Part shown: positions 2,491 to 62,201 of the stretch, one piece after another
Numbering within the stretch: the stretch's first letter is position 1
Layout of the letters: each line of letters starts with the position of its first letter
From: Podarcis muralis
Lineage: Eukaryota
DNA: 64,000 bases
Assembly (NCBI RefSeq): GCF_964188315.1
Contig: NC_135658.1
Span: forward strand, 51,150,001-51,214,000
Direction: 5' to 3'
Notes under the pieces: model-generated
Database searches by the model: none
What the model saw: the letters and a program-made list of their open reading frames with translations, nothing else
Told to the model about the DNA's origin: nothing
Made by a program: the position numbers and the translations under genes

Positions 2491-2620
2491 CTAAGCACCT
2501 ATATGGAACTACAATGTGAGGGTGACTTCTGCATTGCTTCCATCCCCGCTTGCACCAGTTCTGGATTGTTACAGGTTGATTGGCTTCAACAACATTGGTA
2601 ATTTGCAGTTCAGGGTAAAC
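2491..2620 (-). CDS. APP: APP exon 3 (E1 domain, heparin-binding loop), [43 protein letters not shown]
   Basis: Not in the ORF track; found by manual translation. Acceptor taatag|GTT and donor TTAG|gtgagt. Length is 130 nt as in mammals. Confidence 0.99.
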
Positions 2621-24086: not shown

Positions 24087-24254
24087 ATGCTGACAGTACT
24101 GCAAAATCCCTTCTTTTGTCGCAATGCAGCTCTTGGTTCCAGAAGGGTCAGATTCCCATTTTCCGTTCTGAACATTCATATGCATATTCAGCTTGCCACA
24201 GAACATGGCCACTTGGGGCTCCGCCAACAGGCCAGCATTTCCATCAGTAGGCAC
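24087..24254 (-). CDS. APP: APP exon 2 (E1 growth-factor-like domain, N-terminal part), [56 protein letters not shown]
   Basis: Acceptor ttttctgttctag|GTG and donor CAT|gtaagt. Length is 168 nt as in mammals, and the translation is near-identical to vertebrate APP residues 20-75. Confidence 0.99.
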
Positions 24255-41286: not shown

Positions 41287-42338
41287 TCCTAGTGCACTGA
41301 AATATTTTCTGACGCAACCTCAAAATTACCCATTAAATTTACCAGGAAACCCACGCCAACAGATGCAAACTTCCTGGCATTTTAGAAATCTCTGTACTGC
41401 ACTGATAGCAAAATCAATTGTCCCTTGTTAGCAGAGGGCCTAAGCAAATAAGGTTATTTTCAGTTTATTTCACCAGATTAAAAATCATAATATTGAAACA
41501 AAATGAAAAAATGACAACGTACGTTTGTTGGACATACTGCAGGTCTTTGACAACAGTATTGTTCTTAAATTTTAAAATAAAGATACATTGAGTTAGCTGA
41601 AAAACAGCATGTAATGTATATATAATAAGTAAACAGAAACAAGGCAGCTACCAAACAAAACCTAGGTACATTTGTTTTCATTTCCTCTCCTTTTTCCATT
41701 CATTTTTGGCAACACAGTTTGAAGTCTTCCTCTCCAATGTAAAGTCTTAACTAATTTTTCTTTTATTTACATTAAAGACAAAGCTTTGAAACTTCCAAAA
41801 TATTAGCTAGCCAATATTGGGGGGCGGGGTTTGCTGTTGAGTCCTTTTACTCTCATTTTTCTTTTTCAAAGTGGAGGTGGGAGACTTGTTTTGAAAAGTA
41901 ATACAAGTTTTCCCCACCTTCCACCAACAGACCAGATTACATGGATGCATTCTGGAGACATTTTACTACTGCAATTCAGTTCTGCTGCTTTCAAGAGTGA
42001 GACTGAGTGAAACAAAATATTTCCTCGGCCACAATACGCTTACTGTTTCCAGAGGGAAGTAAGAGGCCCTTTCAGCTTCTCTATTGTCCTATCTTTCTTA
42101 AAGATCACTGAAGAGACTTAAAAAAGTCACAACACAGTACAATATTAGTTAGTTCAGATGAGTGACTAGTACCCAAAATTCCACTTCAATTTAACTTATA
42201 AAGGAGAGAATACAGTAAAGGTTCTTCCTGGTCATTTTACAGCCCGGCATGCTTCTAGAGTTCATAGCTCAAATAGAAGGATAACATAGGCTCTGCCTGG
42301 GTTCAAACCCAGTATTTAAAGCAGGCTAACCAGATGTT

Positions 42339-58432: not shown

Positions 58433-60263
58433 TGTGAATTGCAAGGAAGGAGAGGCAGCTAGCCTGGAAGAAGAAAGGTTTGCAAAAACAAGCAAAGAAG
58501 ATCAAGAGATAATGGCTAACATCCCTCCCTGCCAAAAAAAAAAAAAAAGGCAACAGTATTCCTCCTTACTCTATGTGAATGTATTTTTCTTTTCCCTATC
58601 TCTTCAGGACTGTCAAATACAGAGATTTGCACATTATTTTTAATGAGCAAAAAAATTAAATCCTAGATTCTTTCCCCAACAGTCTCCAAAAGAGGTGTGG
58701 CATATTTAGAGCGTCTTCTGCCACTCCCCTAATCTCCCCCACCTTTAAAATAAGAGGGGAGCAGGCTGGTCAAAACCGCAGCCTCGACCACTGAATGATG
58801 TCTGGACCTAACAGATTCTTTCTGAAAGCGCAAGTAGAAGAAAAGCAGACAGCCAAGCCAAGCACAAGGCAGACCCCAGTTTAAGGAAGAAGGGGAAGAG
58901 CTCCCCCCCCCCTTTTTACACTGCCCAGTCGTGTGCCCAGGCTCCAGTACGTCGCACCCAGCCGTGGCTGCCTGACGGGCAGTGAGATGAATGGGAAGGG
59001 AGAGTTGTTTCCAACACCTAGCGGTGAGAGGGTTGCTCCAGGCTGCAGCTCGCATTATTACAGCGCTGCCTTGCTGCACTGCAGAGGCGCCATCTTCTTG
59101 CTCTTAATCTTCCCCGCCAACCCATTTCCTTTCCATCGGCTCCCTAAACGCCCATCCTAAGAGGAGTCCACCCCCCCTCCTTGTAACGCGTGGAGGTGCC
59201 TCTGAAAAACACGCGCGGCCAAGGCGATTTCCTCCCGCAAGACGGCGGGAGGGGGGAGAGAGAAGTCACCCCCCAGGACACCCACACCCACCCCTCTCTC
59301 TCTCGCATCCAAACAAAGTCTGCAAGGCGCTCTGGGATCAATGAGACGGGGGAGAGTGGAAGGTGCTCGCTCCCAGAAGCAGGTCGCGCCAGTTGTGGGA
59401 ACAGACGGGGCGGGGAGGCTGTCTTCTGCTTTCTTTTTTAGGAAGTGGGGGGCTCCCTTGTGCAAACGGGGCGGCTGTTCCGCAGGAGCCGCCGTCCGCT
59501 CTCAAGTTACTCAGAGGCACCTGATCCAAAAACTTGACCCCCCCCTTCTCCCCTATGGACGGCTGGGTAGACGGATGGCCCTTAACCGCCTGCCTGCCGT
59601 TTGTTTTCCGCACTGGAGCGCAGAGAGGAGGAGGAGGAAGAAAAACGAGGCTAGGCTACCAGGAGAGGCGGGAAAGCAGCGGGATGCCTGCCGTCTCCTC
59701 TCCCGATCTTCCCCGCGATGGGTCTCTCTCTCTCCTCCTCCCCCCGGCCTTCCCGGTTCGGTTCCCCACCCCCAGGTCCGCCACACCGGACAATCCGGAT
59801 CTCTCTCTCTCTCTCTCCAGGAAGGCAACAAAAGCCACGCAGCGGCCAGGCGACGCGATCGCGGCTCTGGCGAAGCCAAACACTCGGCAGGCGGATCGCC
59901 AAGACGGCGCACCTCGGGGGGGGGGGGAGGGAGGGAGGGGGCGGCGGCGCCCTCCTCCTCCTACTCCCAGCTTCCCGGAGACTGTCGCTCGCGAAATCCA
60001 GCACCGAGGAGGCGCACGACCCGGGCACCCCCTCCCTCCAAGAAGGCTCCAAGTCGGCGCGTCCCACCTCCCCGCCCCACCTCTCGGCGGAGCCCATTGT
60101 TCAGGCGGGGAGAAAGACCCCCGTCCAGGCGGGGGGCCGGGGACTCCCCCTCCCATGGAGCCCATATCCCGGAGGGCAGCAGCAGCAGCAACTGGGAGGG
60201 CAGCCCCACCCCGCGCCCCTTCATTATGCCGTGTCTCCCACCCACCCCCGGCGCCCGCCTTAC

Positions 60264-60323
60264 CTCCAAAGCGTCGGCGAGCCACGAGGCCGCGAGCAGC
60301 AGCCCGGCTAAATGCGGCAGCAT
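60264..60323 (-). CDS. APP: APP exon 1 coding part (signal peptide), MLPHLAGLLLAASWLADALE
   Basis: Minus strand reads gccaaccgcgATGCTGCCGCAT...TTGGAG|gtaagg. It gives 20 codons and a phase-0 GT donor inside a CpG island, and resembles human MLPGLALLLLAAWTARALE and chicken MLPHLALLLLAAGAARALE. Confidence 0.97.
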
Positions 60324-60475
60324 CGCGGTTGGCGGGGAAGGAGCGGAAGCTCCCGCTAGAGAAGGGAGAGCGGCGAAATCCAGCCGGCGGCTCGGCTTCC
60401 TCGTCCCCGCCTCTGCGCTGCTGAGGAATGGAAGGGAGCTGCAGCAGCGGCACCAGCCGAGCTCCGCCGAGGAAA
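60324..60475 (-). other. APP: APP 5' UTR (approximate)
   Basis: GC-rich, about 150 nt. Runs from a TTTCCTCGGC motif (as at the start of the human mRNA) to the ATG. The TSS is inferred, not observed. Confidence 0.6.
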
Positions 60476-60476
60476 A

Positions 60477-60491
60477 GGCGAGTCAGCTGAT
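60477..60491 (-). promoter_or_regulatory. APBalpha-like USF/AP-4/AP-1 element (ATCAGCTGACTCGCC)
   Basis: 15/15 match to the recalled human APP promoter element. A GGGTGGGC GC/GT-box precedes it at 60501-60508. Confidence 0.8.
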
Positions 60492-60510
60492 GATATCCCA
60501 GCCCACCCAA

Positions 60511-60537
60511 AGCAGCGGCGGCGGCGGCGGCAGCAGC
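60511..60537. repeat. (AGC)2(GGC)5(AGC)2 triplet tract in the core promoter
   Basis: Direct read; lies between the APBalpha-like and APBbeta-like motifs. Confidence 0.9.
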
Positions 60538-60553
60538 AAGGCCGGCCCTCCGC

Positions 60554-60568
60554 AGAGACCCCTAGCGG
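60554..60568 (-). promoter_or_regulatory. APBbeta-like CTCF-binding element (CCGCTAGGGGTCTCT)
   Basis: Matches the human APP promoter APBbeta sequence GCCGCTAGGGGTCTCT (recalled) and sits upstream of the ATG. Confidence 0.8.
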
Positions 60569-62201
60569 AAGCGGCGCGCAACTACAACCGCCCTCCGCGC
60601 ACGCACACAAACACACGCGCGCGCACCCCTGAGGCGCCTGCGATAATAATGGGAGCGAATGTGGGGCGGGGGGAGGAAGGAAGGAAGCCGAAGGAGGGGG
60701 CGCAGGAGCCCCGGTGGTTGTCTGATGCCTGTCTGGGTGGGGCGGGAACGCCGATAGGGCCGTTTCATCCCTCGCTCTTCCTTGGTTGTTTTTTTTTATA
60801 ACTATTTTTAGAAGCCACGCCGCTTGTCTGTCGATTCGCGTCCAGACCTGGCGTCTCTCCTGCCTTTTGCAGGTTACCAGGTGGTCTGTTTTCTTGTTGG
60901 ACTTGGGGGGAGTAAGATGCGGTTGAGGTTTGGTTACAAACAAGCAGGGTATAAATCTTGGGAAATAAAAAAAGGAAATAATGTAAGAATAATATTGCTG
61001 TGAGTTTTTTGGGGGTGGGGTCATGGGAGTAACCCCAGGAGAACTGCCCCCCCAAATCAATACAAATCTGAGGTTCTGCCCCCCCCAACAAAAGCCTGCC
61101 CCCTAACATAAATCCTGGCTACGCCCATCAGTGGGGTGGGGTTAGACTGTATGATGCCCGCTGCCCTTCGAAACCTCTGGATCCAGCAAGTCAGATGAAT
61201 GATCTCATTGTTCATGTAGCCAGGCAAGGGACACAGTGCCCCCTAAGTATGAGTCGTTAATAGAAGAAAGGGATTTCCTCTCTGCCATAGGACATGGAGG
61301 TGGGCCCCCTCCCTCACCTGGCTGGTAGGAGATGGATAAAAGCCAAAAATGTGAGAGAGCTTGCGTAGAAGCCAGAGAGTGAGAGCCATGCTTGATTTCT
61401 GTTTGAATCCTAGGCTGCGGCTGTGGGAGAAGCAAGACCTTATTGGCTGTTAATGCTGTGAGCCCCTCCATCATAGGCTCAGATGGTACATATGTGTAGA
61501 TAAACCATATACTATAAAGACACTACAGTCTCCTCTGCCCCTCATTCCAGGGCAATGGATCCCTGGGTAGTGTCTGGAACGCCTGGAATCACTGCTCAGA
61601 GATTGGGGTGGCATGCCACAATATAAACCCTGCAGCATGTGCGTGGTTGCAGTGGATGCAATTTCCTTCAAGATAGTTTGCTTTGAAAGGCTTTCATCCT
61701 ACCCCATATTTCCATACCCCCCCTTTTTTTAACAGCTAGCTTTCTTAAGGAAAATCTGTGCCACTATCCGTATGCTTGTATGTGTGGGAGTGACAGGATT
61801 TGATGTGGAAGAGGAAATGGTGCTTTGAACTTGTGGAACAGCATTTTGAGAGTTAGATGTTTCTAATTAACCCTATTGTTTGCCGTCTCTGAAGTGAAAA
61901 CCCTCTAGATGCAGCCAAAAAGTGTTAGAACCATGTCAATGTCATGTTTTATTCACTTGAAAGAGTATTTAAAGGACAAGATGTAATTACTAGGTATGAT
62001 TTTTTTTTATTTTAGTTCTTGATGCAGGTTATCCTTTTAATTCCCCAGGAGAATTTCTCACGTATCCAGAAGACTTTGACTGCTGTGTCTGATCTTGCAG
62101 AATGACAGCTACAGCCGTCTTGGAAAGCAGGCCACAGAAGTCAAGACCCAGAAGTATTAGTGCAGTTTTAGTGTGTGCTACAGTAAGTATAGGTAAAGGT
62201 A

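What the first reader, a model, noticed from the sequence alone, without database searches (positions are those of the whole stretch)
60466..60568. APP core promoter: same motifs as human, conserved CTCF-to-initiator distance, but APBalpha has slid about 36 bp
Seen (sense strand): CCGCTAGGGGT, 66 nt, ATCAGCTGACTCGCC, 1 nt, TTTCCTCGGC, giving 82 nt between the CTCF core and the initiator-like motif. GGGTGGGC lies just before APBalpha. Established (recalled human sequence): GCCGCTAGGGGT (APBbeta, CTCF, -93 to -82), 30 nt, ATCAGCTGACTCGCC (APBalpha, USF), 38 nt, TTTCCTCGGC, giving 83 nt. All elements and their order persist across the mammal-reptile split. The two spacers changed in opposite directions and the sum stayed within 1 nt. 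Inference: selection on CTCF-to-TSS spacing (a ruler function), with the E-box position free to move, here abutting the start site.
Basis: partly seen in the sequence, partly recalled or inferred. Interest (0 to 1): 0.7.

Follow-up and report, generated by a model that had tools for sequence, protein, structure and literature searches.

The report
Lizard APP gene core promoter

Summary
On the minus strand lie CCGCTAGGGGT (60568-60558), 66 nt, ATCAGCTGACTCGCC (60491-60477), 1 nt, TTTCCTCGGC (60475-60466), with GGGTGGGC at 60508-60501. The two longer motifs occur once in the window and TTTCCTCGGC twice, against 0.00-0.06 expected by chance. The gene is APP: a signal-peptide exon 1 (ATG 60323), and exons 2 and 3 that match Pfam APP_N. 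RNA reads are spliced from exon 1 to exon 2. Their 5' limit is 60489/60490, where one RNA contig ends in a sequencing adapter. That limit lies inside the E-box, 14-15 nt upstream of TTTCCTCGGC. Published coordinates confirm the human 30-nt spacer; the 38-nt spacer rests on memory. Of the 36 extra nt upstream of the E-box block, 27 are a (GCY)9 triplet microsatellite. Measured to the mapped start, the CTCF core sits at -79, against -92 in human. The 1-nt agreement therefore holds between motifs, not between CTCF site and start site. Published work already describes CTCF as a position- and orientation-dependent promoter activator (median about 79 bp upstream) without helical phasing, and reports a 9-10 nt insertion in this spacer in marsupials. 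Verdict: a real orthologous promoter with lineage-specific indels. An exact ruler is unlikely, and a loose positional window is plausible. I could not obtain other reptile or bird promoters.

The parts
60558..60568 (-). CTCF core motif (APBbeta equivalent), CCGCTAGGGGT, on the sense strand of the gene (forward orientation). It lies at -79..-69 relative to the mapped RNA 5' end.
   Evidence: By recollection it is identical to the human APBbeta core, whose published position is -93/-82. No polymorphism was seen in two other individuals. Binding was not tested.
60511..60537 (-). (GCT)2(GCC)5(GCT)2 triplet microsatellite, 27 nt. It accounts for most of the extra length between the CTCF site and the GGGTGGGC/E-box block.
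   Evidence: Tandem Repeats Finder reports period 3 at 60515-60531. Contigs X13 and X15 span it with no length difference.
60501..60508 (-). GGGTGGGC, the equivalent of the PuF/SP1-type site of the human proximal regulatory element. It lies at -19..-12.
   Evidence: The human element contains GGGGTGGGCCGGATCAG (PMC3582491). The gap to the 15-mer is 9 nt here against 3 nt in human.
60477..60491 (-). APBalpha-type block ATCAGCTGACTCGCC, holding the E-box CAGCTG and an AP-1-like TGACTCG. It lies at -2..+13 and so overlaps the transcript start.
60488..60490 (-). 5' limit of APP mRNA, the most upstream transcript start detected.
   Evidence: RNA contig X17 (1702 nt) ends at 60490 and is followed by an Illumina adapter, with the A shared between genome and adapter, so the insert ends at 60489. 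Stranded raw reads of X24 fall from depth 47 to 0.6 in bin 60476-60500 and to 0 above 60500.
60466..60475 (-). TTTCCTCGGC (it continues as ..GG), a conserved 5'-UTR-proximal motif. It lies at +15..+24 here and at about +3..+12 in mammals.
   Evidence: The same 12-mer TTTCCTCGGCGG is in the bank vole APP mRNA.
60264..60489 (-). APP exon 1: a 166-nt 5'UTR, ATG at 60323, 20 codons (MLPHLAGLLLAASWLADALE), and a donor GT at 60263-60262.
   Evidence: Reads are spliced from here to the start of exon 2 (loose ends at 60262 in X24, X15 and X17).
24087..24254 (-). APP exon 2 (168 nt)
   Evidence: Pfam APP_N, E = 1.8e-16. 76 exon-2 relatives were found in other vertebrates.
2491..2620 (-). APP exon 3 (130 nt)
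   Evidence: Pfam APP_N, E = 3.5e-15.
58900..60800 (.). CpG island around the promoter, exon 1 and the start of intron 1. There is no TATA or CCAAT box near the start.
   Evidence: GC 0.65 and CpG observed/expected 0.76.

Best explanation
The stretch is the proximal, TATA-less, CpG-island promoter of the lizard's APP gene and is orthologous to the mammalian APP promoter. It keeps a forward-oriented CTCF site (APBbeta), a GGGTGGGC plus E-box/AP-1-like block (APBalpha) and a conserved motif at the start of the 5'UTR, in the same order. Transcription starts at or just upstream of 60489, inside the E-box block, and exon 1 is spliced to exon 2 about 36 kb downstream. The different spacers come from ordinary lineage-specific indels. 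One is a 27-nt GCY triplet expansion plus 9 further nt between the CTCF site and the E-box block. The other is a gain or loss of about 37 nt between that block and the 5'UTR motif. The near-equal sum is most likely coincidence within a loose positional window for an activating promoter-proximal CTCF site, not a nucleotide-exact ruler. Shown: the motifs, the gene identity, transcription, the splice and the 5' limit of the RNA. Inferred: factor binding, homology of each block and the history of the indels.
For: APP identity rests on exon 1 and exons 2-3 with Pfam APP_N. Stranded RNA reads cover 60262-60490 only, are spliced to exon 2, and an RNA contig ends in an adapter at 60490. CTCF works as a position- and orientation-dependent activator with a median of about 79 bp upstream, and the mouse App promoter loses Pol II when CTCF is depleted. 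CTCF sites show no helical phasing to start sites. Marsupials carry a 9-10 nt insertion in the CTCF-to-E-box spacer. The CTCF zinc fingers are 99.5% identical across vertebrates, a lizard included.
Against: A match of 82 against 83 nt after two changes of about 36 nt in opposite directions is a priori uncommon. I estimate about 4-5% for one pre-chosen distance and more once the choice among several distances is allowed for. RNA-seq can lose a few nucleotides at the 5' end and cannot resolve a spread of start sites, so a share of transcripts may still start at the human-equivalent position (60477). One contig of run X15 continues upstream of 60900, so low-level upstream starts exist. No other sauropsid promoter could be examined.
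Confidence: 0.7

Rival explanations
1. Exact ruler. Selection holds the distance from the CTCF site to the start-site motif to about 1 nt, so an insertion on one side of the E-box block was compensated by a deletion on the other.
For: The motif-to-motif distance is 82 nt here against 83 nt in human. Of the human value, the 30-nt spacer is confirmed from published coordinates and the 38-nt spacer is recalled. CTCF activation depends on position.
Against: The mapped RNA 5' limit is 14-15 nt upstream of the motif, so the CTCF-to-start distance is about 79 against about 92 nt. CTCF shows no helical phasing. Marsupials have a 9-10 nt insertion in the spacer. The inserted sequence is a slippage-prone triplet tract. 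Only two lineages were compared.
Confidence: 0.12
2. Block swap. A single local rearrangement exchanged the order of the E-box block and a GC-rich (GCC-type) tract. The total length was then kept automatically, without selection.
For: In the lizard a GCC-rich tract lies upstream of the E-box block. In human, as recalled, a GCC-rich tract lies downstream of it. The sums of the parts are nearly equal (about 63 against 64 nt).
Against: No mechanism or breakpoint signature is visible. GCC tracts arise independently and often in CpG-island promoters. The human downstream spacer is known here only from memory.
Confidence: 0.08
3. The conserved 15-mer is itself a start-site element in both lineages, with transcription initiating at the TCAG within ATCAGCTG. 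Under this reading the lizard has merged two start regions that lie 50 nt apart in mammals.
For: The lizard RNA 5' end lies in the 15-mer. The 15-mer is preserved 15/15 despite a shift of about 36-50 nt relative to the start, which is hard to reconcile with a purely position-dependent upstream activator. I recall that a human reference mRNA starts within this block; this was not verified.
Against: There is no canonical initiator match at 60488-60490. Published work places the major human start at a strong initiator 50 nt downstream of the block.
Confidence: 0.1

Closest known systems
Human/rodent APP proximal promoter (APBbeta/CTCF at -93/-82, APBalpha/USF-SP1 at -65/-41, initiator at +1; Quitschke and co-workers, as reviewed in PMC3854070 and PMC9261399)
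   Same: The gene is the same, and both promoters are TATA-less CpG islands. The CTCF core 11-mer, GGGTGGGC, the 15-mer with the E-box and the TTTCCTCGGC motif are the same and in the same order. The 5'UTR is of similar length (166 against 147 nt).
   Different: The CTCF-to-E-box spacer is 66 against 30 nt, with a (GCY)9 tract. The spacer from the E-box block to the 5'UTR motif is 1 against 38 nt. The mammalian TCAG initiator just before TTTCC is absent. The RNA 5' end lies inside the E-box block, so that block is at -2..+13 instead of -51..-37.
Promoter-proximal CTCF sites that act as direct activators (PMC12695661, Nat Genet 2025)
   Same: The motif is forward-oriented and immediately upstream of the start. 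The core begins at -79 with its centre near -74, close to the reported median of about 79 bp. App is named there as a CTCF-dependent promoter.
   Different: CTCF occupancy and dependence have not been tested in the lizard. That work describes a positional window, not a fixed distance.
Position-dependent transcription factor function at start sites (PMC11269187, Nature 2024)
   Same: It is the general rule that spacing between factor sites and the start site matters, and that a site at or downstream of the start can hinder initiation.
   Different: CTCF is explicitly listed there as lacking the 10.5-bp phasing seen for Sp1, NFY and NRF1. An E-box moved onto the start site, as here, would be predicted to change function, yet its sequence is fully kept.

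Membership tests
APP gene 5' end (orthologue of mammalian APP) | Exon 1 encodes a short signal peptide ending in ..ALE, followed by a GT donor | tested here: met
   MLPHLAGLLLAASWLADALE occupies 60323-60264 with the donor GT at 60263. RNA reads are spliced at this point to exon 2.
APP gene 5' end (orthologue of mammalian APP) | The following exons encode the APP N-terminal (heparin-binding) domain | tested here: met
   Pfam PF02177 APP_N matches exon 2 at E = 1.8e-16 and exon 3 at E = 3.5e-15, each searched separately. The exon sizes of 168 and 130 nt are those I recall for human.
APP proximal promoter architecture (APBbeta - APBalpha - initiator) | CTCF core, GGGTGGGC plus E-box block and 5'UTR motif present in this order upstream of the ATG | tested here: met
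APP proximal promoter architecture (APBbeta - APBalpha - initiator) | Transcription starts at the initiator immediately upstream of TTTCCTCGGC | tested here: not met
   The RNA 5' limit is 60489/60490, 14-15 nt upstream of the motif. There is no TCAG directly before TTTCC and no BBCABW match at the start. Minor starts nearer 60477 are not excluded.
APP proximal promoter architecture (APBbeta - APBalpha - initiator) | CTCF and USF/SP1 actually bind the elements | not testable with these tools
   This is inferred only from motif identity and from the 99.5% conserved CTCF zinc fingers.
Activating promoter-proximal CTCF site | Forward motif orientation, located a few tens of bp upstream of the start (median about 79 bp) | tested here: met
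   The core is on the sense strand at -79..-69 relative to the RNA 5' limit.
Compensated-spacing 'ruler' element | The same CTCF-to-start distance in both lineages | tested here: not met
   The motif-to-motif distance agrees (82 against 83 nt). Measured to the mapped start, the core begins at -79 here against -92 in human.
Compensated-spacing 'ruler' element | The distance is conserved across many independent lineages while the sub-spacers vary | not testable with these tools
   No other sauropsid promoter could be fetched. The literature hints at variation in marsupials.

The most novel reading that the evidence does not exclude
The perfectly conserved 15-mer ATCAGCTGACTCGCC is not only an upstream activator site but a start-site-determining element. 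In the lizard the APP mRNA begins inside it. The CTCF site about 75-80 bp upstream, rather than the downstream TTTCCTCGGC motif, would then be the partner that sets where initiation occurs. On this reading, amniote APP promoters would show initiation wherever this block sits, within a CTCF-defined window.
Probability: 0.12. Interest if true: 0.55.

Novelty: new member of a known kind. Interest (0 to 1): 0.3.

Why it matters
APP dosage matters for Alzheimer disease, and the APP promoter was the first promoter shown to depend on CTCF. The CTCF core, the E-box block and the 5'UTR motif have survived roughly 300 million years of separate evolution, which I state from general knowledge. That survival marks them as the essential parts of the promoter. 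The changed spacers form a natural experiment on how much positional freedom each element has. On present evidence the finding adds an orthologue with shifted spacing to a well-studied promoter. It does not establish a new principle, because position-dependent activation by promoter-bound CTCF is already published.

Tried and rejected
(1) I tried to fetch orthologous promoters through spurious ORFs across the CpG island. A 199-aa piece of the + strand ORF found nothing; its length window also excluded the full 486-aa ORF. Six exact ORF look-ups were all absent from the collection.

(2) A protein search with exon 2 returned 76 relatives. The 47 sequences I fetched are all genomic exon-2 ORFs with intron read-through, about 36 kb from any promoter. 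None is from this species or a close relative.

(3) Two DNA pattern scans of JGI metagenome contigs were run. GGGTGGGC + gap + E-box block gave 0 hits. E-box block + 0-30 nt + TTTCCTCGG gave one hit, L001, in AT-rich, evidently microbial sequence with no CTCF site. I took it as chance.

(4) The original papers (PMC307099, PMC110710, PMC457072) are not held, and a literature search for the motifs gave only one useful hit.

(5) Earlier notes of this scan held nothing.

(6) I did not run the large representative protein search, because the protein identity is not in doubt. I gave no human sequence to any tool and met no contig that I took for human.

(7) I considered a deletion between two TCAG direct repeats as the origin of the short spacer. 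I rejected it because it would have removed CTGACTCGCC, which the lizard retains.

Full report
**Observation.** Read on the minus strand, the window holds CCGCTAGGGGT at 60568-60558. Then follow 66 nt, ATCAGCTGACTCGCC at 60491-60477, a single T, and TTTCCTCGGC at 60475-60466. GGGTGGGC lies at 60508-60501. The 11-mer and the 15-mer are unique in the 64 kb window (0.00 and 0.03 expected). The 10-mer occurs twice (0.06 expected). Its second copy, at 42020 on the other strand inside intron 1, is taken as chance.

**What the locus is.**
- An ATG at 60323 opens 20 codons (MLPHLAGLLLAASWLADALE) that end at 60264 before a GTAAGG donor.
- Further down the minus strand are a 168-nt exon (24254-24087) and a 130-nt exon (2620-2491), both with AG/GT borders.
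- Searched separately by reference, both exons match Pfam APP_N, at E = 1.8e-16 and 3.5e-15.
- The motifs sit in a CpG island (about 58900-60800; GC 0.65, CpG observed/expected 0.76) with no TATA or CCAAT box near the start.
- This is therefore the 5' end of APP, transcribed from the minus strand.

**Transcription and start site.** Twenty public runs of the same organism hold at least part of the stretch. I laid four of them on 60151-60900.
- X24 (stranded bulk RNA, raw reads) covers only 60262-60490. Its first mates lie on the + strand, as expected for an RNA from the minus strand.
- X24 depth falls steadily: 47, 42, 38, 35, 27, 16, 12, 6.4, then 0.6 in bin 60476-60500. It is zero above 60500.
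- Forty X24 reads carry loose ends at 60262 that are the start of exon 2, so the splice is shown directly.
- A 1702-nt contig of X17 (apparently RNA) carries the same splice and covers 60262-60490. It then runs straight into the Illumina adapter (GATCGGAAGAGC...). The adapter's first A coincides with the genomic base at 60490, so the insert ends at 60489.
- A junction assembled this way needs several fragments that share one end. That is what the 5' terminus of an mRNA gives.
- Two independent runs therefore put the 5' limit of APP mRNA at 60489/60490. Standard RNA-seq can lose a few terminal bases, so the true start is there or slightly upstream, not downstream.
- With +1 = 60489, the CTCF core is at -79..-69 and the triplet tract at -48..-22. 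GGGTGGGC is at -19..-12, the 15-mer at -2..+13, TTTCCTCGGC at +15..+24 and the ATG at +167.
- There is no canonical initiator (BBCABW) at the start.
- One X15 contig with the same splice continues upstream beyond 60900. Some low-level upstream or divergent transcription therefore exists. X24 has no reads there against about 47-fold depth on the exon, so it is minor in that sample.

**The human side.** No human sequence was given to any tool.
- Published coordinates are APBbeta (CTCF) at -93/-82, APBalpha (SP1, USF) at -65/-41 and a strong initiator at the major start (PMC3854070).
- The 5'UTR is 147 nt (PMC2828463).
- The -76/-47 element contains GGGGTGGGCCGGATCAG followed by ctgactc (PMC3582491).
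- It also shows that GGGTGGGC lies 3 nt from the 15-mer in human, against 9 nt here.
- The 38-nt spacer requires TTTCCTCGGC to begin at +3. A bank vole APP mRNA printed in PMC13320089 begins gctctgTCAGTTTCCTCGGCGG. It shares a 12-mer with the lizard, and unlike the lizard it has TCAG directly in front of the motif.

**Where the spacer differences come from.** The lizard has 36 extra nt between the CTCF core and the 15-mer.
- 30 of them lie between the core and GGGTGGGC, where the lizard has 49 nt and human 19 nt.
- 27 of those 30 are a pure (GCT)2(GCC)5(GCT)2 tract at 60537-60511, the kind of sequence that grows by replication slippage.
- The other 6 lie between GGGTGGGC and the 15-mer.
- The opposite change of about 37 nt lies between the 15-mer and the 5'UTR motif.
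- Contigs of two other individuals (X13, DNA; X15) span the promoter with no length change in the tract and no substitution in 60466-60568. The nearest variant is at 60574.

**Assessment of the ruler idea.** The arithmetic is right, but the inference is weak for five reasons.
1. The quantity said to be conserved is CTCF to start site. The core therefore begins at -79 in the lizard and at -92 in human.
2. Two lineages give a single comparison, and several distances were available to choose from. If the second spacer could take any length from 0 to about 80 nt, a sum within 1 nt has a chance of roughly 4%. The figure is higher once the choice of distance is allowed for. This is my estimate, not a tool result.
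3. Thirty-five mammalian promoters aligned in PMC3582491 show a 9-10 nt insertion inside the -76/-47 element in marsupials.
4. In a genome-wide study, CTCF sites, unlike Sp1, NFY and NRF1 sites, show no 10.5-bp phasing relative to start sites (PMC11269187).
5. The general principle is already published. CTCF acts as a direct activator when bound in forward orientation just upstream of the start (median about 79 bp), and the mouse App promoter loses Pol II on CTCF depletion (PMC12695661).

The lizard site is forward-oriented with its core at -79..-69, so it fits that window well. I conclude that a loose positional window is plausible and that a nucleotide-exact ruler is unlikely.

**Mechanism proposed.** The steps below are inferred.
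- CTCF has zinc fingers 99.5% identical across vertebrates, a lizard included (PMC2515639). It would bind the conserved core about 75-80 bp upstream and promote Pol II recruitment.
- The GGGTGGGC plus E-box/AP-1-like block now overlaps the start. It may serve as the initiation region itself, or as a site for USF-type factors at the start.
- The TTTCCTCGGCGG motif is transcribed and may be the unconventional downstream core element suggested for human APP by the +10/+30 deletions (PMC2828463).
- The 15-mer is kept 15/15 although it has moved 36-50 nt relative to the start. This is the most interesting residue of the finding, and it underlies the 'novel case'.

**Limits.** I could not obtain any other reptile, bird or amphibian APP promoter.
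- ORF-based searches failed.
- The exon-2 search gave only exon-2 fragments.
- Two metagenome scans gave nothing, apart from one chance microbial hit.
- Only one reads call was allowed, so start-site dispersion and tissue differences are unresolved.
- Factor binding is untested.

**Verdict.** The feature is real, and its sequence was described correctly. It is the orthologue of a well-known promoter with lineage-specific spacer changes. The specific evolutionary inference is not supported by the start-site mapping and remains untested across species.

Noticed in passing
window 24087-24092 (minus strand): Exon 2 ends CAG CAT before the GTAAGT donor, giving ..QYCQH. All 47 vertebrate exon-2 relatives whose sequences I fetched end ..QYCQE, apart from two with Q or K in place of the last Q (..QYCQQ, ..QYCQK), and none has H. 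This is a multi-base codon change at a very conserved position, or an assembly error.
   Followed up: no
window 60490 to beyond 60900 (run X15): A 1549-nt contig that is spliced from exon 2 to exon 1 continues about 1.2 kb upstream of the main start. This could be low-level upstream initiation, read-through, or a divergent promoter transcript merged by the assembler. The raw RNA reads of X24 show nothing there.
   Followed up: partly
window 60333, 60358, 60399 (5'UTR): The 5'UTR is polymorphic between individuals. A G is inserted behind 60333, 10 nt upstream of the ATG, in 33 of 40 X24 reads and in part of X13. 60358 is A>G in X24, X15 and X13. 60399 is C>T in X24.
   Followed up: no
window 60574: The only variant near the motifs is G>C (+ strand) in X15, 6 nt upstream of the CTCF core. 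No variant was seen inside 60466-60568 in X13 or X15.
   Followed up: no
window 60301-60425, + strand: About 8% of X24 read pairs have the opposite orientation over exon 1. This is either imperfect library strandedness or weak antisense transcription.
   Followed up: no
window 60176-60190 and 59916-59941: There are further short simple repeats in the CpG island at the start of intron 1: (GCA)5 and a G-rich run. X13 carries a CAA insertion behind 60188.
   Followed up: no
L001 2529-2554: A JGI metagenome contig (Ga0075115_10013543) matches the pattern E-box block + 4 nt + TTTCCTCGG. It lies in AT-rich, evidently microbial sequence, so the match is chance.
   Followed up: yes
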